A stretch of DNA of 64,000 bases from Fimbriosthenelais zetlandica (lineage: Eukaryota): positions 12,834,001-12,898,000 of the forward strand of contig OZ365112.1 of the NCBI GenBank assembly GCA_977030845.1. Reading direction: 5' to 3'. The position numbers and the translations under genes are program-made. The notes below the pieces were generated by a model. It had not been told where the DNA came from. It searched no databases and saw only the letters and a program-made list of their open reading frames with translations. Positions 356 to 18,400 of the stretch are shown one piece after another; position 1 is the first letter of the stretch; every line of letters starts with the position of its first letter.

Positions 356-487
356 CTTTGTATTTATTTTTGCCTTTGCGGCCGGTGAGACAGAGCAAGG
401 AGATGACAATAATGATGAAGATAACACCAGTTAAAGCTACGATGATGAGGAACCACCACTGCTGGTAGAACGGCTTCTGCTCTATTT
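356..487 (-). CDS. sdk: sdk exon 34: transmembrane segment ([43 protein letters not shown])
   Basis: Acceptor tttacag at 488, donor GTAAG at 355; 132 nt, phase 1-1; Sidekick PFYxxWWFL juxtamembrane motif, then a hydrophobic helix and basic stop-transfer residues. Missing from the ORF track. Confidence 0.95.
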
Positions 488-3400
488 CTGTAAAGAAACA
501 AGAATATTATAAGATAAATGAGATAAAAACTGACTTCACAAAAAAACTTTGCAAGGATCTCATTATTTATTTCATATTGACACTGGCTGGCCTTTGATAT
601 CCCAGTTAGCAGCACTGGGAGGACAATACAACAGGCATTTTACATTGTGTAATATTATATGTTGAGACTTACTGAGTGTCTTGAAGTGCCGGGAGGGAAG
701 GCTAGGAGCACTAATGCCCACATTATTGAGAGCTATCACTCTAAACTGATACTCTGAGTTAGGTTTAAGGTTGAGTAGACTAATAACGGCTTCAGGTTCA
801 GGCGAGGTCTTCCTCATACTCGTGTCCCACTTGGACTCTATAAAGAGACATTGTAGAACATTTTAAAGTCAAAAAGAAGAGCCAAAAAGAAGTAAAGAAA
901 GACATGTTAACTATTGTTTATAACAAAAGTTCAAAAGTTTTAGAAAATATAAGTGATAAATATAAAATATCATTTTTCAAGAGATACCCACCTCCCCTCT
1001 CCATGGCTTGAATAATGTAACCAATGATAGGCGAGTCTCCTTCCTCGCTATTCTCCCATTCTATAGTTACTGATGTTGGTCCTTCCATTACACTAGGTCT
1101 GCTCGGCCTCTCTGGGGATCCTGTAAAATAAAGATTGAGAGATTGATTTCAAAATATGGCTTCAAATACTGCTATGCTTCTACTAAGTTTTGATGGTAGT
1201 CAACAAGATTGATGTCCCACGAAGTGTATTCAAATTTGGTAGATTTTAAAATTTAAAATTGATGAAATTTCGGGTACATCACATCAATATCGCAATAAGA
1301 TTTGGCAAGTAACAAGTAAGATCTTACAGAATACAGATTAAGTAAATAAGTTAATAATTTGAGTTAATAATTGCATCATTGACTTGCTTCAGTTAGAATA
1401 GTAATAGAACAAAACCTGTACCTTTCTGAGGGCCGGTAGTTATGTTACCAAAGCGAGATGGGCCCCATCCCACACTGGTCTGAGCTCTCACACTGAAGAT
1501 GTACTTGACGTTCTCATTAAGTTCTTTAGCCTCATAATAATGACGATCACCGGAAAGTTTAACTTGTACGCTCCTACTCTCACCTATACATGGAATGAAC
1601 GAATGTTAGATCACTCTCAATATCAGTGAGACATTTAGAATTCCTTAACTAAATAACAAAAAAGATTGCCTCAAACCAAAACCAAAATCCAAACCAAAAC
1701 AAGCATCTTATCATGCACCCAATATTTACTAATCCTAATAGAAATAAACATAATAAACCACAATGAAGACAACAATCACTATTTACTGTTCAATCACAAA
1801 AAAGAATTCTGGAAAACATTATCTTACTCCTATGAGTTTCATGATTTTAAAAATATTTTCCAAGGAAAATCTGGAGATGATCATGCAGGAAATTATCACT
1901 GCAGTTATTGATAAAGACAAGGCATCTAAAATGCACGTCAATATTCGGCAAGAAAAGTTGTTCATCACAAATTTGAAAAAGATTTACCAAAATATCAAAC
2001 AATTGAGAACAACCTATGGATAAAAGCCACACCAAATTAAAGATTGTTAAACACACAAAGTTATCTATGTTCTACGCCCAAACCTGCTGTTAATAGTACA
2101 CAACACTTTATGCTAGATATACACTGCATTGAGAGAATGTACATCTTTCCACATATTATTTACAACTTGTGCTTTATCTATACATTATTAAAGCCTGAGA
2201 TCTGCAGTCCTGCCCGGATCTCAACCAAGTATAGATGAAGTAAAGATTGTTGTATATGAAGAATGAAAAAGTGCAAGTGATAGTTAGGATGGAAAGGAAA
2301 GAGAAGGGAATGGCACTGCATGCATTCTGACTGCACCAGAACAAGGCATTAATGTCCATACAACTTTTTGATTCCTTGTAGCACAGATGCACTATTTTGC
2401 TGTTCAGTTGCAGCAACTGACAAGCAACCAAATCAATTTGCTTTTCAGGGCAGCAAAGGATCAGCAATTAAATGCATTTGGGCTACAAAGGTAAGCCATG
2501 TTCTGATGAGTCGCCTGAGAGAAAGGACCTTCAGGGGAACAAGTCCTCCTGAAAGCCACAGCGGTGTAAGAACTGGAATTCTTGCCTGTGGATCTTTTCT
2601 CGCGAGAGAGTTTTTGACCTGTAAGATATATGTAATATGATATGGCTAGCGTCTAACAATGGTACATGGTGTTACATGGTCATCATCAGTGATTCCCCAT
2701 GAGCATGGTTTTATGTCTTTAAGAGAAAATACCCTTACTGAGTGTGTACCAGGCAAAGCCTGCGACAACAGATATAACATATAGATGAACGGTAAGCACA
2801 GAGATACTGGTATAGATCAGACTGGGGTGAATTACAGGTAGAGAGTATGACTAACTTACCATTGATGTCTGTATCCTGGTAGTAAGACACCTCGAAGAAG
2901 CTGATGATACCATTAGACTTGGACGGTTTCTCCCAGCTTACATTAAGTGAGGTGAGGGAGGTGACCATGAAGCGAAGACTACCAGGTTTACCAGGCACTG
3001 AAACAAAAATAAAAACTCTCAAACTCGTGAAAATCTGACCACATTCTGATCATCGTTACATGAAAGAACCCAGGAAAAAATCAATAGATCTTAACATTTC
3101 CCGACCCTGCATGAAGAAACGTGCTACGTTATGAAACTTTTGCTCACCTCCCTCCAGGGTTTTGGCGATGACAGGAACAGTGATGTTAGGACCGTCTCCA
3201 GCAGCATTGAAGGCCAGTATAAACATGGCATACTCATTGAACATCCTCAGCTGACTGAGTACAGTCTCTGTCTCCGCAGCTGCTACTGTCTTTACACTAG
3301 AAGTGTTACCAGGCATGGATTCTATCCAGTAGAAAATCTGCAAACAAAGATCATTTTGTGTCACAATCAAAGGTTGATAGGTGAATGTATCCTTATATTG

Positions 3401-6400
3401 AATATCCTTAGAGTATGGGGGAGCTTGCAGAAATATTTCTACTAACCTTGTACCCAAGTAAGTCTCCGTTCCAGCTCTCTTGGCTGGGTGGATCCCAGCG
3501 CAGCTTGATTTCTGTAGAACTGATGACCTGAGCAGCAGCATTAGATGGAGCTTCCGTGGGAACTAAAGACAAGGATACTCATTAATCTACGTAAATATCA
3601 TGTAGGTGGTTAGAAAAATGGTATTTATCAAGTTTTATTTTATTTTCCTTAAAGAAATTTTCAGGACTACCGATATTCTTTTGAAAACTTTCGAATTAAA
3701 GTAGTAATAAAATCTCATCGAAATCGATTTAATTAAAATTATTAAGACTATTGATTAAAGGATTATGATTTTATATTAGATATAGTCCATAATGTCTGAA
3801 TCCAAGCCCCAATATTAGCATAGCATATAATTATTAAACTAGTCAGGCATCGTGTGCCTACCACCTTGAGCTGAGAGTAGGAGATAAGAGAGAGAAGTGA
3901 GTGGGTATATATATGTGCTTACCGGCCTCCCCCACATACACATCTACAGGCCTGCTGAAAGGTCCATGGCCCCGCCCATTAAAAGCATTGACCTTAATCT
4001 CATAGGAGACATCAGCATTAAGGTTAATCAGTGTGACGCTTGTAGTGGGATAGGTGACAGTCACTGGGGGATAGGTGCCACTCGACTTGGCTGAGGTGTG
4101 ACGGTCGAGCCGGCGGTACCACACTTGGTACCCCAATGGATCCCCATTCCACGACTCGGTCGGTGGAGGCTAAAACCAAAAGAGCGACGGACAGGGTTAG
4201 AGGTTAGATGCAAGCAGAAAAACAAGAAGGATTTCGAGGTAAGTTTCATCAATGGCATGGCGTTTGAGTTTTGTTTGCGTTTTTGGCAGAGGAAAAGGGT
4301 CAGGGATGTGGATTTTTTAAGATGAATGGCTTGTGTGATATGGAAGGAAGAGGTTTAGGAGTTATATATTAAAGTCATAGGGTGATGAGGGTCTATCACC
4401 CACTCGTATCATTGTTAGAAAAGATGTACAATTGCTGCAATAGATCCTGTAGAGAACGCTAGATATGCCAGCAATCTACACCGTTTTAGCTGCCAGCTTA
4501 TAGGCATATTAAACTATTAAATTAAGGAAGTGGATTTGCATTTCTGTCATTCAACGATCAATTATCTGCCTTGTAAAGAATTTTGAGGTCTTTACAAGTT
4601 CCCAGAGCAAATGTATATCCACTTCCCATTATAGTTAGTGGTTTTGTGGTGAGTTGATTTTGTTTGTGGAGGATGGAAATCCTACCCATTTCAATATAAA
4701 CAACGACGACTTGGCTCCAGGGAGAGTTACCCAGAGCACTGAAGGCTCTGATCCTCAGCTCGTATGTGTGTAAGAATTTAAGTTGCTTCACGAGATGCTC
4801 AGTGGCATAAGGTACATTGAGGACTGAGGACTGCCACTCAGCCGGCACCCCAACCTCTCTATACTCAACCACATAACCTATGAGATCACCATTCCAGGAC
4901 TCCACAGGTGGAGGCTGAGAGAAACACAACATAATACTCATCACTAATAAGTTATTAGCTCATCACTAATATGATCAAAATCTGTCTAAAAAAAAGTCTA
5001 GCAAAGGTTTTTAGAAAGTATATTCCTACTTATAGCTTAACTAAAAGCATTCATCTGCAATATAATTGTTGTTTAAATTTACTCTATATATATGGGACAA
5101 ATGATAAGTTCATAATATAAAGGTGTTCATTTCAGGCAAGGTGAAGATATCTAGCAGTATCATGAAATCTACAGATATAAATGCAAATATATTGCCACAA
5201 AATAATGAGATGGAAATATTTCAAAAACATGGTAAGAGAGCTGAACATTTTTCAAGCGAACCAAATAAATTTGTATCCACTGAAGGACAATTCATACAAC
5301 ACGTAAATTGGCGTATAAATGTGAAGAATTGTTACCTTCTTCAGGGTGTACATTGAGGTAAGAAGATGAATATAAGAACATGAAGGGAGAGGAAAGGTGT
5401 ACCTAATTAAATGTGCAACAAGTGCATTTCTAATTCAGAAGGAACTCAGCATTTACAAGATTCTTTTTCAGGATGACAGTTTAACAATATGATATAATCT
5501 GAAGTATTTTTGGAGAGACGTGTAAATAGTTTCAATTGTATAAAAGGAAAAGTCTCTGAAGAATAAAGCTGTATATTTAAAAGGTAATGATCAATTCCTA
5601 CCTTCCATGAGATGAGGACAGATGTGGTGGTTTTGGGCGCCACAATCACTTCAAGTGGAGGGCTCTCCGGGGCTGAAAACAGCAACATATTTTGATTAGA
5701 GAAAAGAACCGGTACCGATCGTGCATGTTCTATTCACTTCTGCCAAGAGCAGAACTAAAAGGAGACGAAAAGAAAAAGGAATTTAACTCATAGCTATGAA
5801 AGTGGACAATGTGGACAGGAATCTCTTACCAGCCTGCTTGGTGGTCACTTGGTCTGATTCCCCGCTGAACTGACTTGATCCAATGTCATTCACTGCGGCA
5901 ATTCTGAACTTATACTTAGTGTTAGGTCGCAATCTGAAAAAGAACATTTTAAACTTAAATTTCTTGCATTAAAGCACTGAGAAATGAAGGCGATCTTAAA
6001 TGCTAATCACAGACCAACCAAGTAGATTATTAATGGCCTTTAAACAATTTTTTGTTTAATACAAAGAAATTATTTTATAAATGTATGACGTACTCGGTAA
6101 TGGTATAAGCCACAGCATCTGGAGGTACGAGTTTGTCCAGGGTTCTCCAGTCCTCGCCGTCTGGCTGTATCTGTATGGTGTAGTTTCTGATGGGACTGTA
6201 ACCGTTACTGCTGGGCTGCCAGTTAACAGTCACGTAACGGTTACCTACAGCTGACGTACCGATCTGAGGCTCACTGGGCGGGTCTGGTACAGCTACAACA
6301 GTCACACATTAACTCTATTAATATACTACATTCATAGTCAAAATTAACTCTATTAATACACTACATCTATGGCAAGAATTTCGCATGTAGATAACCTACA

Positions 6401-9400
6401 TATTTGTATTTCGTCTATATCTATATCAGATTCTAAGATACAAGTCGATGACAAACTTATACAAACTGGTAGTTCAGTAATAAAAGGTAATCAAGAATAT
6501 AATAGCACAGTAACATGTGTTAAAATTGTCAGGTAATGAAAATTTATAAGGACATACTTCTGTCAACAATAGTGAAGACTTCGAGTACAGCAGGCGCGCC
6601 TATACCCAGCTTGGTACGAGCTGAGACCCTGAACACATAGTATTTATGTCTCTGTAGATGACTGATGCTGAGGTCCCGGGCATTAGGACCTAACCCATCC
6701 TCCTCTATAGCGAAGTCAGGGCCTTCAGTCTTCTCATAGTAAGCCACGCTGTAACCTGTGATGATTCCATTAGGTTCCTTAGGTGGACTCCACACCACTA
6801 GTACTGTACTGTAGGTGACATCAGGGAAATACACACTGCTTGGAGGTCCGGGTACTGGAAAAGAAAATTATGATGAACCGTCAATGATTGAATATCAAAA
6901 TTCCCTTCAGTATTACTCAGGGCCACCCTAGACTAGGGGGTCAATATCAAATGAAATTTTTTTTTGTCCTCAATGATTAGAGAAATCCAAAGGTTACAGA
7001 ACAAAACATTTCGTAGTTTGTATCATAATACAAAAAAGGACACTCACCATCCTCAAATGTTTTCACTATAGGAGCCGGGCTGCTGAGAGCTCCATCTCCT
7101 ATGCGGGTATAGCCCAGCACCTGGATCCTGTATTGAGTGTATTTCTTCAGGCTCGTCAGTATAGTCTCCCTGGCCAGGCTGGTGTTCACATCATTCACAG
7201 ACGGCTCTAACCAAGGCATGTTAGCTATACTGTAGATGACCTGGTGGAAAATAGAAAATAAAACTTAATATTTTCAGGAATTTTTCAGATAGGTGAAAGG
7301 AAGGAAGAAATCTTTGAAAATTATGAATGAAAATCTATGAAGATATTAGCAATGTACCTTGAAGCCGAGTAGTTTGCCGTTTTTATGCATCTCGGGTATA
7401 TCGGACCATTGTACACGTATGGAGGTAGAACTGAGAGCTGTAGCGTTGATTTTAGCTGGACCCTGACTGGGCACTGACTCACGGGTCCTGTCTGTGGCTA
7501 TAGTACTGTACTCACTAAAGCCCACCTTGTTATAGGAGGCTACACGCACATCATACTCAGTCCACTCCTCTAGTTTAGTGAAGGTATAACTATTAGCGTT
7601 CTCATTTCTGATCTCTATAGTTGTGATGAAGTGGCTGGCACTGTGCTCTTTATGCTGGATGAGGTAACCTCGACCCTCACCATTCCACAAGTCAGAGGCC
7701 AGAGGCTGCAACAAGGAAAACATTATTATTCAAAATATCTCAATGGACAATAGTTCAATGGTGCTTTATTTTATATCAATTTTTTATATCAGGACTGTAA
7801 ATAAAAACCCCAAAATATACACAATTGATAATCCTGTTAAATAGCTTAATTTGATTTTTTAAATATGAATGTAACTGCCTAATAAATTATGCTAATTTCC
7901 AGGATCATAACAATATAATCTCATTGATTTAATTGTTAATTTGTACTGATCATTTCATTGATTTAATCGTTAATTTGTACTGATCATTTCATTGATTTAA
8001 TCGTTAATTTGTACTGATCATTTCAGCCACCCACCTTCCATCGTACACGGATGGCCGTCTCATTGTCCGCCCTGACTGTCACCTCAGATGGCGGGCTAGA
8101 TGGCTCAGCTTGGATGGTTTGGAAGCTCCGTGTGGAATCACTGGGCATACTGCGGCCTGCCACATTCTCTGCTAACATCCTCAATATGTAGTTAGTATAG
8201 GGCCTCAGACCAGTCACCTCTAATGAGGTAGCCTCAGGTGCTGTCTTCTCAAAGATCACCATCCATTCATCGTCAGTGTTAATCTGGGCCTCAATAACCC
8301 ACTTGGTAATGGAGGTGTGGCCAGAGAATCCTGGTATAAACTGTACGAGTACAGAACTCGCCTGGATGTTGGTGATGGCCAGATTACGAGGCGGAGCTGG
8401 GCGCTCTGAGAAAAATAGACAAGATCACTGTAAACATAGTCCGACAGTAAATATCATTAGACTTAATATAGGTAAATTTCCACTTATTTTTCTCTTATGA
8501 TCTTCAATTATGAAACTTTAGGCATGACGATTTGTGTAGAAGAGTATTGTGCAGTGTACTGATAAAGCATTTTGGTATTCATTTTTATAAATGTTGGTAT
8601 ACGAATAATTTGTAACCCATACATAACACCAAATATATATTACTAGGGGTTTTGCTATAACAGGGGGAATTGAGCACAAAAACATTTCTAGGACAATTTA
8701 CAGAACAAGGGACAATTCATGTAACAATGTGAATGACAATGAACTTGAGCATTTTACTAAACAATTGAACATTTGAACATGAAACTTTCTATGTGTGAAC
8801 CTTACCAACTATAGTGAAGTGTGGCAGAGAGAAAATTCATGGACAGTATAATTAGTACAGAGAGATATCAAATATATAAGACAGATGAAGACAAGTCAAT
8901 TTACAAGAGAAGTGCAGAACATTGTGATATAGATTTTACGGAACTATTTTTGTACACTTTTAGAGCAAGAATAGTTGGAGAAAACAGGACGACAAACGGT
9001 ACCTAATACAGAATGATCATTCAAAAGACATCCACTAAGACATACCTTCATAAATAGACAAATATTAATATTTCTTGGCATATCAATTTGAGAATATTTA
9101 CCTGGGGGTACACCTGATCCTATGTCGGCAGATCTGAGGGGACCAGCGCCCACCCGTGTCTTAGCGAAGACCTCTATGGTGTAGGTGGTGGTAGCCGTGA
9201 GACCGGTAATGGTGTAGTTCAGGGTGGTGGGTGATAGGTCCACACTCACTTTTGAGATGGTTTCATTCTTCCTCATGTAACTCAATGTGTAACCTACAAA
9301 TACATATCACAATATCCATTATATTTTAGTTCAACAATCAACAAATTTAACCCCTTTTTGGTTATCAGAATTACAATATAGATGTATAATTACTTACCAA

Positions 9401-12400
9401 TAAGGATTCCGTTTATATGTGGTGGAGAGGTCCACATGACTTGAAGAGAGGTATCCAGAACATTATCAAACCAGAGCATTCCAACCGCATCAGGAACTGT
9501 GAGAAAAGGGAGTATGGTTTATTGAAAATTGAGTAAAAGATCGAAGAAACTACATCTTTAACCGCTGTCCCATTCAATATTGAACTTTGAAGATTTATTC
9601 TAAGAACCATTAATAAAGGAATTATATATTTTACTTACCATCCTCCATGGTTTTGACTGAGACAGGAGGACTCGAGGGACCATCGCCTTTACTGGTGAAG
9701 CAGAGTATACGGATCTGGTAGTTGGTAAACTTGTGGAGGTGGTAGAGGTTGGCCGTCTGTTCACCTAACATGTTAGCCGTGTCTGATGGTATGGTCACCC
9801 AGATCTCTGACCCACTCTCACCGTCTACCTTAGCTTCAATCTGTTCAAAAATGTACAAAATCATTTTAAAATTTTTGATCAAGAAATATAACCCATAGCA
9901 TAGCCCAGAGCAAATTATATTCTTTCCTGTGCATATTCCACAGCATTTTCTTTTACGGATTTAGATATTTTAAAGTTATTTGTTTAATCTTAGGTAAAGA
10001 CGGTCAATGCGACTAGATGCGCTTTACATAATTATTTGACCCACCTTGTAGCCTTGGTTAATACCGTTGATGTACTGAGGACTGGGAGGGATCCACCTGA
10101 TCCGGATGCTGGTTGAGTTGAGAGCGGTAGCTGACACTTTTTTCGGAGCTTGGGTTGGCTTTCCTTCCATAGTTCGAACGTAAATAGTTGAGCTATAAAC
10201 CTGTAATGAAAACAAGTAAGATTTCTAACACTGTAGATAATTCAATTGGAGGGCGATACCTACATAAACGTCCTAGCCCAATATCACTCAATTGGAGGGC
10301 GATACCCACTTAAATGTCCTTGCCCAATATCATTCAACCGGAGGGCGATACCCACATAAAGGTCCTAGCCCAATACCATTCAAATGGAGGGCGATACCCA
10401 CATAAAGGTCCTAGCCCAATATCTTTCAATTGGAGGGCGATACCCATATAAACGTCCTAGCCCAATATCATTCAAATGGAGGGCGATACCCACATAAATG
10501 TCCTAGTCCAAGTCTAGTTTAGATCAAAAATAGACCTGCCCCTGCTCACTGACTATATACGAGATGCCTTACCCCTACACCTTTCCTGTTATAGGCAGCT
10601 GTAGCTATCTCATACTCCTGGAAGACGATCAGACCCTTGAGTTCATACATCTCCCGTAGCCGGCTGGTAATGTTCTCATAGGTGAGAGTTTCATCAGGAT
10701 AGCCTGACGGCTTGAAGCGGATAATGAAGCCTTGTAGAGGACCGTTCCACTTGTCTTCATCTGGAACTTTCCATCGTAGAATGATGGAGGTCTCAGATCG
10801 CGGACTGCCGACTACATCACGAGGTGGTCCACTGGGTGCTGTATGGAAATCAAATTACATTTATATTCAATTTTGCCTCTGATAGGAGTCAATATTGCAT
10901 TTGACCTTGAAAACTGTTCTCATTTCAGAAACTCAGTATTCAACATTCAAACACTTGCTGAAAAGCTTTCATTAAATAGATTACTTCATGCATAACTCAT
11001 GAAGACACTAAGTGAACTCTGGATAGCAAACATCATGTTACTACTGAGGTATTTGAGTAATTTAGTATAGAGAACTTACGTTGTTGAGGTAGGGTAACAG
11101 TCTGGCTTGGTTTGCTGCCCATACCTTCACCTACATCATTGACAGCGCTAACACGGAACTGGTAGGAGCGGGCAGGCAGTAGGCGAGGTACAGTATAGGT
11201 CATCATAGAGGCTGGTACCTGATCATTAGATACCACCCAACCTTCACTGTCTAATAACTCAGTACCTGCAAGAGACAGACAAGTCACTTAAATACCCAGA
11301 TCAAAATTTACAAATAGTAGTTACAACAAGGCAAATAAATGGGTTAAAAAGGTGAGATATTGCCATTTGAGGTCAGGCCAAAAGCAGTGATGCTCAATTG
11401 ACTGCGTAGAAAAATGCATAAAATATGCATACAAATGCATTAATTTCATTTTACAGACCAATGCCAAAAGCTTTTGTATATCCGATAGAATGCTCTTTTT
11501 CAATTGAAGGATTTGAAAGATGGATGCTTGACTGAGGCAAAATGGACAGAGATGCACAAGATCCAAGCCAAAATTTTAACAGATTATGAACCGTGCAAGT
11601 AGTGGTTGAAACGAAGCTACAAAATGATGTGCAAACTACTGGAGCCAAGCCAGACAACATCAAAATTAATACACATAGAAAAAGAAATGTAGATGAGAAT
11701 ATCATGCATTATTTAGAGAAGCATTTGAACAGCACCCAACAGAGAGACAGGAGTGGCAATTGCTTCTGAAAAGAATCGTCGGTTATTTCTGCCAGAATTT
11801 TTGACAAGTTTGCAACAAAAGGTCTTGAGAGATTCCTTGTGGTGTCTTCCAGGGTGACTATCTACTTTTTTAGGTACATCGACCAGACAGGTGGAGCCAA
11901 ATAATAGTTATAAATGAAGTAAAGAAAGAAAAATAGAGAAAGCAAAATGATGACAACATAATATACGGGGCCAACACAATATAAAATAATTTATAAATCA
12001 ACCAAACTGGGTTGCAGGGAGTGGCCAAAATCCACTAATAAACCTACCCATGAGGATCTGAGGCACTGCAAGAATCAACTAAAATGTTACTCTCTCACCC
12101 GGCATTTAATCTAAATTATATGCTTAATTCTGGATCCAGAGCAAAATTAGATATACAGTGCATTATATAATAATCAACTACGGTAGGTGAAGTTAGAGTT
12201 GATATCATTCCACGTGATACATTAGGTTTGTATGAGTACAGTGCAACTAGGCATAACCAACTGTGTCTTGCAACGTATTCAGATACGGATATTATACGTA
12301 AGGGTTATTAAATTATATTAAGAAGCATTAAATGAAAGTGATTTGCCCTTTTTGAGGAAATAAATCAAGTGAAAAATGTCAAAATGTATGTACAGAGGGT

Positions 12401-15400
12401 ATAAAGTAATGAAGTAGATACCTGGAGGGACGAGCCTGAACTGGACGATGTAACGTTTGATGGGAGAGTTACCATCAAAGCCAGGACTCCACCTCACATC
12501 TACAGCCCGAGTATTGTCAGCGTTAAGATGGACTTCATTCACAGACGGGGGATAAGGCAGCTCTGAAATATAGTAAAGTAGCATAAATATGGCGGAAAAT
12601 ACTCCAACAAACTCTACTATCTGACAGGCACAAGAGTATGCTGTTCCTGCCGAGTTTATCAAAATAATTGTATATAATATTAATATTTTAAATCATTCGT
12701 CCTTATAATCATTTCAAACTGGCAGGATTTGAAATTATTCTTAATAATTCAGTTATCCAACATCGATTACTTACTTTCATAATACAATACTGCATTAGAA
12801 ACGTTGTTATATATACCATATAATTGTTTTACAAATTAATAGTTTTAAAAATTAATCAGTTGCTATGACGTACCTATAACTTTGAGGTGGGCCGTGCCAG
12901 TGTCGTTTCCAGCTCGTGAGATAACGTCGCATCGATAGGTTCCGATATCAGAGTTGCGAACAGCACGTATCTTGAGGTTGCCTTTCTTGTCACCTTGTAG
13001 CAGTAGGAAGCGGTCATTATAAATGATAGGTTCATCATTATGGAACCAGCTCCAGCTCACACTGATAGCTTCATCATGACGGACCTTACAGTGAATGGTA
13101 TGAGTAGATCCCTTAATGACTGAGGCATCCTGAGGTGGTTCATACACGGCAGTCCTCACTGAAAAGATAAAGCGAACATGACATTACAAACTTCTATATA
13201 TATACATTTCAAATCATGCACAATACTAGACAAAAAATTCGCCTCTGGTCCCATCTATGTGATATGGGATAGCTAAATAGGCTAGAAAAATAGGAGCAAG
13301 TTTGCTAAAGTATAAATGTATTATTCCACTTACAGTAGACTCGGAGGAAGGCTGAGGCCACAGCTACGCCCTTGGTGTTGGTAGCGTTACAGACATATTT
13401 GCCCGAGTCGTCAACGTTAGCTCGCGTGATGAGCAGCTCTGAATCGTGGACCTGGATGCGACCTGAAGAACCTGTAAGGTCCTCACTGCGCCCTGACTCC
13501 AGCACTGAAACAATTAATACATATTAACTACGACTTACAAGACATCCTATATAATTTATAGCTGGAAGAACTGACTCTTGATTTTCATTTGACATGTTCA
13601 GGACCTACCTCTGTACCAAGTAACAATGGGTTTCGGAGCCCCTGTGACTTCACATGGTAGTTGGATGGTATCATCAGCGATCATTGTACTATTCTCCAAT
13701 TTGCGGACAATCTCAGGTGGTGAACCTATAGTAAATGAAACGGGGGTCAATGTTATGAATACCTTTATGAGTTGACGCTTAGAGCGCAGCAGAGTTATAG
13801 CAGGGGTGGATCATTTAGGTTACTCTTCTCCTAACTTGAGGTAAAGCTTTATAGGGTTGATTGTTACATGTAACAAAGAGTTTCTCATTGACTCACTCAA
13901 AACTTTCAGCCATGTTGCGGCGTTTATTTCTCCAGCTTCATTAGTGACAAAACACTGGAACATGCCGGAATCAGTCGGGTTCACCTCGCTGATAAATAGC
14001 TTTCCCTTCTCCTTTAATGAATATCTGAAATGGACAAAGACCCAGTAAGTTCTAGGAGCATACAGATAAAACCTATAGAAGTAATTTATTAAAATAGTTC
14101 CAATTATTTTAGTTATAATGCAGGAATTTCAGGTATCTTACCTCCCTTGGTAGCCATCTTCTAATGGTTTAGCGTTACGGTACCATTTTATTTCGGGGGT
14201 GGGTGCCCCCTCAGCTTGACAGAGAATTTCTAAATCAGAGCCGAAGTCTCGGTTTATCTCCGTCTGTGGTCCAGTTATAAAGGAAGGTTTAGCTGAAACA
14301 AAGAGCGAACAAATTATAAAATTGACACAGGTAGAGGTACAGGTTATTGAAGGCATTTTTAACTTAAATCTGTCTCAAATCATACCACAATGATTCAATA
14401 ATTACCAAGAACAGTTAAGTTGGCTCTGGCCACGGCAGCAGGGAAGGTGGGGCCTCCAGTCCTGTTGAAGACCGCCTCACACTCGTACATGCCGGAGTCA
14501 CTGAGTACTGGGTTCTTAATGGTCAGCTGTCTACGATACCGCGAGAAGATATACCGCAGATTATCCTGTCTAATCTCTACCCGACCCGACTCAGTCTTAC
14601 GAAACCAATTCATGAAGAGATAATTCAAGGACCTGGTGGAAAAAATGGTTGAAATGTTAATATTTTGAATATTTGTAATAGAATGAATGGTAGGCATGAT
14701 GGAAGGGCGTCTTCTGGATATGTAGGTGTAGTAGAGGTGTGTGGAGAGTGGCTGTAGGGCATGGATTAACATGTAATCTGTCTGTAATGGATTTAGATTA
14801 GTAAATGAGATTATCTCAGCTATAATGTGATCTCCCCATCTCTTCATTTGCCAGCTTTAGTCATTGGTCACCAATTAATATTATGGATGCATGTTTATAC
14901 TATAGGCCACCTTTGTAGAGGGGCTGCCCCTATTGTATTTTTTTCTATTTGCATTTAAGTTCTATCAATGTGTTTAATTATCATGACTCAAGTTCATGAC
15001 TGAATGTAGAAACACTACAATGGGAGTTCTTACATACTAAATCATATATAATCTAATCTAGGATTCATTAAACAAAAGTGCAAAGCAAAATTACAACATG
15101 AGGTTTGATTTAAGGGAAAAGCTGTAGACTTTCTCTTTCGGACATCAATGTTTTTTTTATCATATTCTTTGAATTACTAAGCAAAGATCTATCAGCTTTT
15201 AGATTAATTTAAGCAAAAAGTAGCAAAGATTGTAGCAACACTGAATTGTAATCCTCATGTAGAAGGATACAATGATCTAACTGATGGTCTTAATGTGTTC
15301 AATTGAAGCCTGTAAGATAAAGCATCAACACATCAACACCACGTGGTTGACAATTGAAAGACACATTTTAATAAAAACCGAAAAAAGCAGAGCAAAAACC

Positions 15401-18400
15401 AATCAAAATCAAAATTATTGCTGTCCTATCCACCAATTGTACAGAGGGAAGGAGAAACATCGATAATCACTGAGATGGGAATAAAAAAATATCTAACAAT
15501 GGGAAGGGCAATATACTACCACTCTCTCAATGGGATTGTGTCCAATTCTTTTCGTGAAAAAAAAAGATCGTCAAATTATGTCTCCAAAAATTTAAAACAA
15601 ATTGTTTTTCATTTTATATTTGACTGTAACGGAATAGTTATCTGGAAAGGAACCATTGTAGATAAATGTACTTGAATTGTTAAATTTGACATTTGTTTGT
15701 GATATAAAGCTCCTCAGTTTGGTAGAGACATATTTGGTTATCAGAATAAGCGTCCTTCCCAGCACCCAGGTCAGTATGTACCCATGTGACATTGGAGTGA
15801 GTGATAACCAAATTATTTTGAGCACGTATTAAATGAATGTGTCTGCTTAGTAGTGACATAAATAAGAAGCCAGGGAACAATTCCAAGAATAAGTGAATAA
15901 CCCTTCGGTATAGAAATGTATTCGTCCTTTATCAATAGCCCTCGTTTATATAAAAATATATTATATATAAGAAATGATTTATGAAATAATTTTCATTAAT
16001 AGTTCCGACCTTTTATATATACATTATTTACTGTAAGGTTATTACTTTTACTTCAATATTAAATGAATATTATTTATTTAAATTTATATTTTAATAAGAC
16101 CTAATTATTCAAAATTATCTGAAGCAGCTTTGTATACAACCTATATTAATTATATAATTGAAATAAAAATACATCAAAGTAAATCTTCTGTTCATGAATA
16201 TTTTCATGCTCATTCCTGGGACGGAGTCGAATCAATGAATTCAGATTTTAAATTCCTATTCATACCACAGAGCGAGACAGAAACATGATCTAGCCATGTG
16301 TGAAATTGGCACAGAGAGTTACAAAAAGTCGTCAAATTTGCATTCCTATTTCCTTTCATTCCTCATCAAATCTGATCGACTAAACGTCAGATTCCATGCA
16401 TTGCCTCCAAGCCATAGAGTTTGCATCCTACAAGATACTAATGTTAAGCACCCTCGTACATAAATATGCACCTTTTTCATGTTCATCATGACAAAACCTA
16501 TTGCAGACAAAATCGTGAAACCAGACACCCCCTGTCCTCATTCCAGAGCATGCAGGTTCCCTATAACTTGGTCTAAATTTATTAAAGCTCAAAGCCTTGA
16601 TCATTTTATAGAGCACTAATGGCAATATCTACTTAATCATTAGTTATTTTTATGTTGGCGCATGACACTTTATTCATATTCAGATCTAATAATAGCGATC
16701 ATTTCAACTCCAGAATATACCTTTACCTTTGACTATGTCCTATAACTACATTTATCTCTACATAGTTCAATAACAATTATTTTTAGAAAGTTTATCAACT
16801 TAAATATGGCCTGTTTTGTGTAAAATAAAATCTGGGAGTAGTGGGACATGAACACTGGGAACCAATTAACCTGATAAAAGACAGAATGGTGACTCCACCA
16901 AGAACAGGTAGGACGTGTGTGAGGTGACAGAGAAAGAAAGGAGAGAAGATGAGAGAGAAGAGAGGAGAGACACAGTATAATGGTAACACCTTGATTGGTC
17001 ATTAAATGGGTTCCCGGGAGGAGAAGGAGAAGAAGAAGAAGTTAGGGAGACCACTTCATGCACGCTTTTGGTACACAGGTGCCTGGTTAGCGGGCAAGTC
17101 ACAATTAACTTAATAGAAAAAGGCGTTCTCAGGCCAGAGACCGGAGAAAACTCATTGTTTTATTTTAATATTGTTCTCTAGCCCATTCTTGGAGAAAGAG
17201 TTCAACTTACACTCCGTTGCGGATAACTCTGTGCAAGCAGAATGGTACAAAGGATGGTAAAACGGTCAAACTTAGGATCAAATATTCAGAAATCTCAGAA
17301 GAAATGACGGTGCTATGTTCTTCTTTCCCCCTTAATATTCTAGGGAAAGATTTAAAATATTAACCAGGAGAGTATAATTCAAAGATATTTAGAAAATATA
17401 ATTCAACCGTGATTGGAAATAATGGAAAATATATTGAATATTTGCTTATAAATTAAATTACTTCACAATAATTACGATCTAAGTAATTTACCTTGCGTTG
17501 GCCACACACTCCAGCTTGGCTGCTCCTGTGTTTTGGACCACCTTGGTGTCCGTGGGAGGGATAACAATACTCGGGGGTATATCACCGGTGGCACTACCAA
17601 AGTCTGAAAAACCAATCAGCAAAATCATTGTTTCTATCTTAATAAATTTAAATAGAAAGTTTCTGAATATTCAGGTATATATTTGAGCTGCAATCACTAC
17701 TTCTAATGGGACATCATTCTATCTATCAATGAAGTAAATTAAAACGTATAAGAAATCATTACTCCATTAGAACAAAAAAAACCTTGCGTTACACAAAAAA
17801 AACTATCAAGATATGGATCTATAGGGAACCCATTATTGTAGAATCAATGAAAAATTGACTCCCAGAACTATATATATGCCTCATGCTTTAAAAAAAGGTT
17901 GCATATGGGAAACTGTGCAATGAAATGTAAAAATGTGCACTCAAAATTACTCTCGTACTGAAAATAGATTCCTAACATTGAATTCTTCGATTAAGGAACA
18001 TCAACAATCGTTTTGAAAATCTGATTGTTGAACATACTTTAACAGAAATTTAAATAAAATCAATCAAAAATCAAATCCACCTGACGATGCTCGATTGATT
18101 ATGAGGGGGTAGGAATCGTGCTTTATTTTACCTTCAGATTCCTCGCCTGGTTAACAGACACCATCATGTCAATTATTATTTGAAAAATAGTTATAATGGG
18201 AGCAAACTTCTATTAATTTATCAGACAAAATAATGAGTTGATATAGAGAACTACATTTGTATGCGTTCAATTCTTTCAGGGTTACTATAAATTTATAATG
18301 ACAGTTATATTCAGTAAAAGAAATTTAAGTCCTTTGCCCTCCCTTCTTAATTTTGTTTATCGTGATATTCAACCTGTAGGCCTAATATTTTATTTGTTGG

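What the first reader, a model, noticed from the sequence alone, without database searches (positions are those of the whole stretch)
2739..12789. Synthesis: candidate combinatorial splice code in the Sidekick FN3 stalk
Seen: the compact 3' half of sdk holds one frame-locked mutually exclusive exon pair (FN3-10). It also holds several in-frame microexon candidates that fall in inter-domain linkers (Ig6/FN1, FN4/FN5, FN10/FN11) or loops (FN1, FN12). Established: Sidekick adhesion specificity lies in the Ig1-4 horseshoe, while FN3 domains are thought to set ectodomain conformation and cis interactions. Dscam1 is the classic Ig-CAM diversified by mutually exclusive exons. Inference: this lineage may tune stalk geometry by splicing rather than recognition specificity. 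I know of no description of this for Sidekick but could not search the literature.
Basis: partly seen in the sequence, partly recalled or inferred. Interest (0 to 1): 0.7.

Follow-up and report, generated by a model that had tools for sequence, protein, structure and literature searches.

The report
Ancient alternative exons in Sidekick stalk
The cell-adhesion gene Sidekick here carries two interchangeable versions of the exon for most of its tenth fibronectin domain, a pair shared by worms, brachiopods, molluscs and ribbon worms, plus two smaller conserved optional exons; the tiniest proposed microexons have no support.

Summary
The gene is Sidekick on the minus strand, with 13 FN3 domains between about 12560 and 670.

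**Exon pair, confirmed.**
- Exons 27A (4914-4686) and 27B (4169-3923) both encode FN3-10 from the B-C loop to strand G.
- Both have AG/GT sites, start in phase 0 and have length mod 3 = 1.
- The frame stays open only if exactly one is used.
- The same A-then-B arrangement occurs in a related species (A 63%, B 70% identical), Lingula, Lottia and Tubulanus.
- RefSeq isoform pairs of Lingula and Haliotis differ only at this exon.
- Intronless transcript contigs carry an A-type exon.
- All eight A exons form one clade (96/98).
- A crinoid and a scorpion lack an A exon.
- B keeps the bilaterian ending VGEA; A replaces it with a shorter ending without the glycine.

**Microexons, mixed.**
- An 18-nt exon in the FN1 C-C' loop (12065-12048) is conserved (0 of 300 shuffles). 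It sits where beetle, stick-insect and tick isoforms carry optional microexons.
- A 33-nt cassette with a GC donor in the FN12 loop (2618-2586) is conserved and encodes RxKR.
- The 3-nt, 6/9-nt and Ig6/FN1 candidates are not conserved.

No RNA data were available for this species. "Stalk geometry tuning" remains inference. I found no published description.

The parts
5602..5672 (-). Exon 26: N-terminal part of FN3-10 (strands A and B, ends ...ISWK). It is the constitutive exon upstream of the alternative pair and ends in phase 0.
   Evidence: Splice sites and frame. The orthologous exon was found in sp2, Lingula, Lottia, Tubulanus and Antedon.
4686..4914 (-). Exon 27A: the A-type version of FN3-10 from the B-C loop to strand G. 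It is 229 nt, enters in phase 0 and leaves in phase 1, and ends ...VYIEM.
   Evidence: Orthologues: 63% in L001/L002 and 64% in P0040. A-type clade 96/98. dN 0.295 with dS saturated.
3923..4169 (-). Exon 27B: the B-type (canonical) version of the same part of FN3-10. It is 247 nt, enters in phase 0 and leaves in phase 1, and ends ...VYVGEA as in all bilaterian Sidekicks examined.
   Evidence: It is 69.5% identical to the sp2 B exon. dN/dS is 0.125. Alignment A3.
3447..3562 (-). Exon 28: start of FN3-11. It enters in phase 1 and is joined to either 27A or 27B through a shared split Val codon.
12048..12065 (-). Candidate 18-nt microexon in the C-C' loop of FN3-1. It inserts VPQILM. Acceptor ...ttcttgcag, donor gtaggt, phase 1 to phase 1.
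   Evidence: The sp2 counterpart (L002:706-723, VPAALI) has the same length and the same flanking sites. Identity is 70% over 40 nt, reached by 0 of 300 shuffles. RefSeq optional microexons of Tribolium, Bacillus and Dermacentor insert at the same point.
12422..12562 (-). Exon FN1a (first half of FN3-1), which flanks the FN1 microexon intron (12421-11266).
11080..11265 (-). Exon FN1b (second half of FN3-1).
2586..2618 (-). Candidate 33-nt cassette exon in the C-C' loop of FN3-12. It inserts [11 protein letters not shown], which contains RxKR. It has an AG acceptor and a GC donor (ACAG|GCAAGA).
   Evidence: This is the only intronic island clearly above the shuffle null: 47 bits against a maximum of 23.7. 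In alignment A1, sp2 reads GEKLSRSKRST (L001:13350-13382) with synonymous codon changes, including AGA to CGT. The peptide is conserved only in the frame that fits the flanking exons. The model stays open with the cassette included.
2860..2997 (-). Exon FN12a, upstream of the cassette intron (2859-1584).
1422..1583 (-). Exon FN12b, downstream of the cassette intron.
3862..3870 (-). It lies 52 nt downstream of the 27B donor. Not supported.
   Evidence: The motif is present. Its acceptor AG and donor GT are absent in sp2 (A2), and no conserved candidate was found. In relatives, A-type exons join exon 28 directly.
8806..8808 (-). Not supported.
   Evidence: The motif tatag|TTG|gtaagg is present. 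The sp2 sequence at the matching place has no such architecture, and the intron shows no conservation above the null.
356..13158 (-). Sidekick gene from the Ig6 exon to the transmembrane exon. It has 23 constitutive exons plus the alternative pair. Constitutive exons: 13158-12874, 12562-12422, 11265-11080, 10838-10573, 10200-10045, 9840-9639, 9496-9398, 9293-9102, 8405-8035, 7705-7358, 7240-7048, 6854-6558, 6292-6094, 5933-5830, 5672-5602, 3562-3447, 3337-3148, 2997-2860, 1583-1422, 1120-992, 837-673, 487-356.
   Evidence: All exons have AG/GT sites and the frame is open. The gene is colinear with the sp2 contig. It is 50% identical to Owenia Sidekick.

Best explanation
This is the 3' half of a Sidekick (sdk) gene. 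FN3-10 is built from a constant exon (strands A and B) plus one of two tandem, homologous exons, 27A or 27B. Each supplies the B-C loop and strands C to G.

Both exons enter in phase 0 and have length mod 3 = 1. Only transcripts with exactly one of them keep the reading frame. Transcripts with both or with neither hit early stops and would presumably be removed by nonsense-mediated decay.

The pair arose once by exon duplication, before nemerteans, annelids, brachiopods and molluscs diverged. Both copies have stayed under purifying selection. B is the canonical form and ends in the bilaterian-wide VGEA. A is a faster-evolving form whose strand G and FN10-FN11 junction are one residue shorter and lack the glycine.

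Two further optional exons insert peptides into C-C' loops. One is an 18-nt microexon in FN1, at a site that is also alternatively spliced in arthropods. The other is a 33-nt cassette with a GC donor in FN12, which adds an RxKR motif (a possible proprotein-convertase site).

Shown here:
- the gene anatomy and the frame logic;
- conservation of the elements;
- isoform and transcript evidence in relatives.

Inferred:
- use of both forms in this species;
- removal of double-inclusion and double-skip transcripts by nonsense-mediated decay;
- any effect on stalk conformation, cis interactions or cleavage.
For: **Anatomy and frame:**

**Homology of the two exons:** BLASTP E = 9e-16. Both match the same fn3 profile positions.

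**Orthologous A and B exons, in the same order and with the same boundaries:**
- sp2: L001 9992-10219 and 10883-11128.
- Lingula L009: 21511-21738 and 22215-22445.
- Lottia L010: unannotated A at 14694-14916, B at 15429-15653.
- Tubulanus L013: unannotated A at 15011-15241, B at 16647-16871.

**Isoform and transcript evidence in relatives:**
- Lingula XP_013386811.1 and XP_013386795.1 differ only at aa 1573-1647.
- Haliotis asinina XP_067672270.1 and XP_067672271.1 differ only at aa 1569-1645.
- An intronless 7.35-kb Logan contig carries a 2164-aa ORF with an A-type FN10.

**Single origin:** the eight A exons form one clade with support 96/98.

**Constraint:**
- Between two sp2 haplotigs there are 0 substitutions in 229 nt (A) and 0 in 247 nt (B), against 2.3-3.3% in the flanking introns.
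- dN is 0.20-0.30 with dS saturated.

**Fold:** an A-type FN10 (Lingula) folds as a confident FN3, pLDDT 93.7.

**FN1 microexon:**

**FN12 cassette:**
Against: - There is no RNA evidence from this species. No sequencing run was listed, so use of 27A, of the FN1 microexon and of the FN12 cassette here is inferred.
- RefSeq isoforms are model predictions. I could not inspect the reads behind them.
- The FN12 cassette is seen only in this species and one relative. It needs a non-canonical GC donor. Nothing similar lies in the short orthologous introns of Lingula, Lottia or Tubulanus.
- The plain alignment score for the FN1 microexon is within the shuffle range (26.9 bits against a maximum of 28.4). 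Only the architecture-aware test is significant.
- No conserved RNA pairing that could enforce exclusivity was found.
Confidence: 0.78

Rival explanations
1. 27A is a decaying or silent duplicate (a pseudo-exon). Only 27B is ever spliced into functional mRNA in this species.
For: There is no RNA evidence from this species. Most public gene models, such as those of Lottia, Tubulanus and the scallops, contain only B. A evolves faster than B.
Against: The A exon keeps an open frame, its AG/GT sites and the same boundaries in eight species of four phyla, and these exons form one clade. Synonymous sites are saturated while dN is 0.3. There are no substitutions between haplotigs. A-type isoforms or transcripts exist in Lingula, Haliotis and an annelid-like transcriptome.
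Confidence: 0.05
2. 27A acts mainly as a regulatory 'poison' exon. Included together with 27B, it shifts the frame and lowers Sidekick output through nonsense-mediated decay, rather than making a second protein.
For: Inclusion of both exons gives a frameshift and early stops.
Against: The A exon is conserved at the protein level with FN3 hallmarks. It is modelled as a confident FN3 domain. It occurs alone, in frame, in full-length transcripts and RefSeq isoforms.
Confidence: 0.07
3. The full first-reader model holds. Five or more microexon sites, including the 3-nt and 6/9-nt linker exons and an Ig6/FN1 exon, combine with the exon pair into a combinatorial code, and the 6/9-nt exon is coupled sterically to 27A.
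For: The motifs exist with plausible splice signals. The 52-nt gap after 27B is shorter than any intron of this gene, whose minimum is 104 nt. Sidekick isoform sets in other animals show many small optional segments in the stalk.
Against: None of these three sites is conserved in the related species. A-type exons in Lingula, Haliotis and the Logan transcripts join exon 28 with no inserted residues. Motifs of 3-9 nt between AG and GT are common by chance.
Confidence: 0.08
4. The conserved intronic islands at 12065-12048 and 2618-2586 are splicing-regulatory or other non-coding elements, not exons.
For: No transcript evidence exists for either in this species or in sp2. The FN12 element needs a GC donor and is absent from other phyla.
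Against: Both have acceptor and donor signals conserved in register, a length that is a multiple of three, and the phase that fits the flanking exons. The FN12 element shows synonymous-type codon changes and has a stop in another frame. The FN1 element sits exactly where arthropod isoforms carry optional microexons, one of which begins with the same Val-Pro.
Confidence: 0.15

Closest known systems
RefSeq predicted Sidekick isoform pairs: Lingula anatina XP_013386811.1 / XP_013386795.1 and Haliotis asinina XP_067672271.1 / XP_067672270.1
   Same: They carry the same alternative exon pair at the same place (FN3-10, B-C loop to strand G), in the same A-then-B genomic order, with the same A-type and B-type signatures.
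   Different: They are automatic models in other phyla. I found no paper describing them. The Owenia model CAH1794891.1 and an older Lingula model fuse A with part of B. Lottia and Tubulanus leave A unannotated.
Drosophila Dscam1 mutually exclusive exon clusters (exons 4, 6, 9, 17)
   Same: Tandemly duplicated exons in an Ig-superfamily adhesion receptor each encode part of one Ig-fold domain, and one is chosen per transcript.
   Different: Here there are two variants, not dozens. The pair is in an FN3 stalk domain, not in the Ig domains that set homophilic specificity. Exclusivity can be explained by reading frame alone. No docking/selector-type RNA pairing was detected in five species.
Two-member exon pairs in adhesion and receptor genes: arthropod N-cadherin pairs (PMC2655722), and FGFR IIIb/IIIc (from my own knowledge)
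   Same: These are ancient two-way substitutions of homologous exons conserved over hundreds of millions of years. In FGFR the C-terminal half of one Ig-like domain is swapped, as in FN10 here.
   Different: They are different genes and domains. The FGFR swap changes ligand choice. Here the known binding module (Ig1-4, PMC5045292) is untouched and the function of the swap is unknown.
Optional FN1-loop microexons in arthropod Sidekick RefSeq isoforms (Tribolium VPPIS, Bacillus rossius GVVTAAACRAA, Dermacentor EDMFW)
   Same: The insertion point in the C-C' loop of FN3-1 is the same. The inserts are small (5-11 aa) and in frame. Tribolium's begins with Val-Pro, like the window's VPQILM.
   Different: The sequences are otherwise unrelated and of different lengths. 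Homology as opposed to repeated origin is not settled.
Proprotein-convertase cleavage within FN3 domains of L1-family adhesion molecules (from my own knowledge)
   Same: A dibasic RxKR-type motif lies in an exposed FN3 loop of a neural Ig/FN3 adhesion molecule.
   Different: Here the motif would be supplied by an optional 33-nt exon, and cleavage is purely hypothetical.

Membership tests
Mutually exclusive exon pair derived from tandem exon duplication | Adjacent exons are homologous and encode the same part of the protein. | tested here: met
   BLASTP gives 34% identity, E = 9e-16. Both exons match Pfam fn3 positions 22/23 to 82/83. Only 516 nt separate them.
Mutually exclusive exon pair derived from tandem exon duplication | Same splice phases and similar length, with the reading frame kept only when exactly one is included. 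| tested here: met
   Lengths are 229 and 247 nt. Both enter in phase 0 and leave in phase 1. The model is open with A alone or B alone, and hits stops with both or with neither.
Mutually exclusive exon pair derived from tandem exon duplication | Both copies are conserved as coding sequence across species. | tested here: met
   Orthologous A and B exons occur in sp2, Lingula, Lottia, Tubulanus and Haliotis; for Owenia a full A-type exon is seen, plus only part of B fused to it in the gene model. The A exons form a clade at 96/98.
Mutually exclusive exon pair derived from tandem exon duplication | Transcripts contain one or the other exon, never both or neither. | not testable with these tools
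   No runs were listed for this species. In relatives, RefSeq isoform pairs and an intronless A-type transcript contig fit the rule.
Dscam-type exclusivity by competing RNA pairing (docking and selector sites) | Conserved intronic elements are complementary to sequences next to each alternative exon. | tested here: inconclusive
   The inverted repeats found are short and not conserved. Duplex energies between the acceptor regions and the introns are not consistently beyond shuffles in five species. There is no intronic sequence conservation around the pair.
Sidekick (Sdk) family | An ectodomain of 6 Ig plus 13 FN3 domains, then a transmembrane helix. | tested here: met
   Ig exons lie at about 14850-12874. 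There are 13 FN3 domains when the pair is counted once, followed by a transmembrane exon at 487-356. The best full-length matches are annotated Sidekicks, with 50% identity to Owenia Sidekick. Ig1-5 were not modelled in detail.
Sidekick (Sdk) family | A cytoplasmic tail ending in the PDZ-binding motif GFSSFV. | not tested
   The cytoplasmic exons lie beyond the low end of the window.
Neuronal-type microexon | A very short in-frame exon (27 nt or less) with conserved flanks, included in a tissue-regulated way. | tested here: inconclusive
   The FN1 18-nt candidate has conserved length, sites and flanks, and arthropods have counterparts at the same position. Inclusion and tissue regulation cannot be tested. 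The 3-nt and 6/9-nt candidates are not conserved.

The most novel reading that the evidence does not exclude
For more than half a billion years, lophotrochozoan Sidekicks have kept two alternative builds of FN3-10. They differ at the hinge to FN3-11: the invariant VGEA is replaced by a shorter junction without the glycine. In this worm-like lineage the pair is combined with optional C-C' loop inserts, one of which installs a furin-type site in FN3-12. Splicing would then set both the conformation and the proteolytic shedding of the membrane-proximal stalk, independently of the Ig1-4 recognition module.
Probability: 0.25. Interest if true: 0.65.

Novelty: new member of a known kind. Interest (0 to 1): 0.5.

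Why it matters
- The role of Sidekick's long FN3 stalk is poorly understood. Reviews note only that splice variants exist and that their significance is unknown (PMC7479261).
- A pair of alternative FN10 builds kept under selection in at least four phyla is a ready-made natural experiment. It points to FN10 and the FN10-FN11 junction as functionally important.
- It gives two isoforms to compare in adhesion, cis-clustering, membrane-apposition or junction-localisation assays.
- It exposes systematic annotation errors. The two exons are fused in the Owenia model and an older Lingula model. The A exon is missing from the Lottia and Tubulanus models.
- FN10 (a 19-aa cassette in salmon Sdk2) and the FN1 loop appear to be recurrent alternative-splicing sites in Sidekick across animals.

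Tried and rejected
- **RNA evidence.** The look-up of sequencing runs listed no run with kind rna or kind any. Two further attempts found the server busy. Read laying therefore could not be used.
- **Protein search with 27A alone.** The search for homologous proteins found no candidates in the allowed length range.
- **Missing DNA.** DNA of the P0040 contig was unavailable. Lingula isoform X2 is not on record, so X1 was used for the locus.
- **RNA pairing.** A 13-nt inverted repeat overlaps the 27B acceptor (4164-4176 with 4483-4495). I considered it as an acceptor mask. I dropped it because duplex energies are within shuffle expectation here and in four other species.
- **A exon outside Lophotrochozoa.** None was found in the crinoid Antedon. 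Its 722-nt intron between exon 26 and B has no FN3-like frame. None was found near FN10 of the scorpion Centruroides. Tick, horseshoe-crab, stick-insect and beetle isoform sets show no difference at FN10.
- **Lingula X3 cassette.** The optional 10-aa segment of Lingula X3 turned out to sit in the FN12/FN13 linker, not at the window's FN12 cassette site.
- **FN12 cassette in other phyla.** Nothing similar lies in the short FN12 introns of Lingula, Lottia or Tubulanus.
- **Small microexon candidates.** The 3-nt, 6/9-nt and Ig6/FN1 candidates show no conservation.
- **Rooting.** The tree cannot say whether the duplication predates Lophotrochozoa, because B-type and outgroup sequences are unresolved.

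Full report
**What is there.** The stretch lies in a Sidekick gene on the minus strand. Stop-free segments and splice sites give a clean model. It runs from the Ig6 exon (13158-12874), through 13 FN3 domains, to the transmembrane exon (487-356). Every exon has AG/GT sites. The closest full-length protein is Sidekick of the annelid Owenia fusiformis (50% identity), followed by Lingula, Tubulanus and mollusc Sidekicks. The genome is 447 Mb in 79 contigs and has a single Sidekick orthologue. It is not Owenia itself. I call it a lophotrochozoan, probably an annelid.

**The exon pair.**
- FN3-10 starts in exon 26 (5672-5602), which ends ...ISWK in phase 0.
- Two candidate continuations follow: 27A (4914-4686, 229 nt) and 27B (4169-3923, 247 nt).
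- Each has a polypyrimidine-AG acceptor and a GT donor. Each begins PPPxESWNGD and leaves one base (G). That base forms a Val codon with exon 28 (3562-3447).
- The two exons are 34% identical (E = 9e-16) and cover the same fn3 profile positions, 22/23 to 82/83 of 84. That span is the B-C loop and strands C to G.
- Counting the pair once gives the canonical 13 FN3 domains.
- The spliced model is open with A alone (1456 aa) or B alone (1462 aa). It runs into stops with both or with neither.

**Is the pair real biology?** A profile-free search with 27A found two short genomic ORFs from other species. They are 64% and 62% identical and have the same exon boundaries. One of them led to two 20-kb haplotigs of a related species, which I call sp2 (L001 and L002).
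- *sp2.* The whole 3' half of the gene is colinear with the window. An A exon (63% identical to 27A) lies upstream of a B exon (69.5% identical to 27B). Cross-comparisons of A with B stay near 30%.
- *Lingula.* The locus has the same layout: exon 26, A, B, exon 28 (L009). RefSeq isoforms X2 and X1 differ only at residues 1573-1647, which is exactly this exon.
- *Haliotis asinina.* Isoforms X1 and X2 differ only at 1569-1645.
- *Lottia and Tubulanus.* Each has an intact, unannotated A-type exon with AG/GT sites between exon 26 and the annotated B exon.
- *Fused models.* The Owenia model and an older Lingula model fuse a full A exon to part of B. This is an annotation error, but it shows that both exons are present.
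- *Transcripts.* Three full-length proteins from Logan assemblies carry an A-type FN10. One sits as an uninterrupted 6.5-kb ORF on a 7.35-kb contig, so it comes from mRNA. It is closest to the window's protein and to Owenia.

**Age and selection.**
- In a maximum-likelihood tree of 25 FN10 C-terminal parts, the eight A exons (annelid-like, brachiopod, molluscs, nemertean) form one clade with support 96/98. B exons and outgroup sequences are unresolved. One duplication therefore predates the split of these phyla.
- No A exon was found in a crinoid or in a scorpion.
- Arthropod and vertebrate isoform sets show no substitution at this place.
- Whether the pair is older than Lophotrochozoa and was lost elsewhere cannot be decided from this tree.
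- Both copies are constrained. Between the two sp2 haplotigs there are no substitutions in A (229 nt) or in B (247 nt), against 2.3-3.3% in the three flanking introns.
- Between the window and sp2, synonymous sites are saturated. dN is 0.30 for A, 0.20 for B and 0.15 for a constitutive exon.

**What differs between A and B.** Alignment A3 shows that B-type exons, and all arthropod, echinoderm and vertebrate FN10 domains, end in (Y/F)VGEA before the linker. All A-type exons instead end in a hydrophobic residue, Glu, then Ile, Leu or Met. They are one residue shorter and lack the glycine. A-type FN10 of Lingula is predicted as a confident FN3 sandwich (pLDDT 93.7, pTM 0.84). The swap thus replaces most of the domain surface and the junction to FN11. 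The Ig1-4 module, which mediates homophilic binding (PMC5045292), is untouched. That this changes stalk geometry or cis interactions is a reasonable inference, but nothing here tests it.

**How exclusivity may work.** The frame rule is sufficient on paper: double-inclusion and double-skip transcripts would be targets of nonsense-mediated decay. I looked for Dscam-like competing RNA pairings.
- Inverted repeats in the region are short.
- Duplex energies between the acceptor regions and the neighbouring introns are not consistently beyond shuffles in five species.
- The introns around the pair show no sequence conservation between the window and sp2.

I therefore favour frame-based surveillance plus ordinary trans-acting regulation of exon choice. 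The regulators are unknown.

**The microexons.** I compared all 23 orthologous introns between the window and sp2 against shuffled controls.
- *FN12 cassette.* Only one island clearly exceeds the null (47 bits against a maximum of 23.7). It lies at 2648-2575, inside the FN12a-FN12b intron. It contains a conserved acceptor, 33 nt (2618-2586) and a conserved GC donor, ACAG|GCAAGA. In the phase required by the flanking exons it reads [11 protein letters not shown] here and GEKLSRSKRST in sp2. Four codon changes are synonymous, including AGA to CGT. The other frames are not conserved, and one has a stop in sp2. It would insert an RxKR motif into the C-C' loop of FN12. Lingula, Lottia and Tubulanus have short introns there and nothing similar.
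- *FN1 microexon.* An architecture-aware scan looked for a polypyrimidine-AG acceptor, 9-36 nt in phase, and a GTR donor. It found one conserved candidate in the FN1a-FN1b intron, at 12065-12048. It reads VPQILM here and VPAALI in sp2 (L002:706-723). The length and flanks are the same, identity is 70% over 40 nt, and 0 of 300 shuffles reach that value. It inserts into the C-C' loop of FN1. RefSeq isoforms of Tribolium (VPPIS), Bacillus rossius (11 aa) and Dermacentor (EDMFW) carry optional segments at exactly that point.
- *Unsupported candidates.* The same scan found nothing conserved in the Ig6/FN1, FN4/FN5 and 27B-exon 28 introns. The 6/9-nt candidate after 27B (3870-3865, or to 3862) lacks its acceptor and its donor in sp2. 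The 3-nt candidate (8808-8806) has no counterpart in sp2. In Lingula, Haliotis and the Logan transcripts the A exon is joined directly to the next exon. This argues against the idea that a linker microexon is coupled to A.

**Literature and novelty.**
- Full-text searches combining sidekick or Sdk with 'mutually exclusive exons', 'alternative splicing', 'microexon' and 'tandem exon duplication' found no description of these events.
- The Sidekick review says only that several splice variants exist and that their significance is unknown (PMC7479261).
- The exon pair is visible in RefSeq models of two species, so it is not unseen, but it appears to be undescribed.
- As a kind of thing it is a new member of a well-known class: a two-member mutually exclusive pair from tandem exon duplication in an adhesion receptor.

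**Limits.**
- No RNA run was listed for this species, so everything about its usage here is inferred from relatives and from conservation.
- The identity of sp2 and of the Logan sample is unknown to me.
I tested each of them here.

Noticed in passing
L010:14694-14916 (Lottia gigantea) and L013:15011-15241 (Tubulanus polymorphus): Each locus has an intact A-type FN10 exon with AG/GT sites that is missing from the public gene model (XP_009060061.1 and XP_074647497.1).
   Followed up: yes
P0023 residues 1575-1680 (Owenia CAH1794891.1) and P0163 residues about 2006-2111 (older Lingula model): These public gene models join the full A exon to a fragment of the B exon. The result is an aberrant FN10. 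It is a likely annotation artefact caused by the exon pair.
   Followed up: partly
P0240 against P0234, residue 1576 (Oncorhynchus kisutch Sdk2 isoforms): Vertebrate Sdk2 RefSeq isoforms differ by a 19-aa optional segment inside FN3-10. The same domain is therefore alternatively spliced in fish, but as a cassette rather than by exon substitution.
   Followed up: no
P0213 against P0188 and P0186, residue 757 (Tribolium): Tribolium has an optional 9-aa segment (GSSYEFLFK) at the FN1/FN2 linker. It also has a 32-aa optional segment at residue 424, in the Ig region.
   Followed up: no
window 8405-8035, against sp2 L001:4491-4615 and 4814-5064: The single FN5/FN6a exon of the window is split by an extra intron in the related species. 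This is an intron gain or loss between the two.
   Followed up: no
window 10502-10196 (FN2-FN3a intron): Three tandem copies of a unit of roughly 120-145 nt lie here. They give near-identical open frames ([16 protein letters not shown]...). This is an intronic tandem repeat with no FN3 similarity.
   Followed up: no
window 8024-7947 (FN6a-FN6b intron): The motif GAAATGATCA recurs every 34 nt, which indicates a short intronic minisatellite.
   Followed up: no
P0151 against P0152, residue 1842 (Lingula X1 and X3): Lingula has an optional 10-aa segment (GELDNQVQHF) in the FN12/FN13 linker. This is another stalk splice site in a relative. I did not search for a counterpart in the window.
   Followed up: partly
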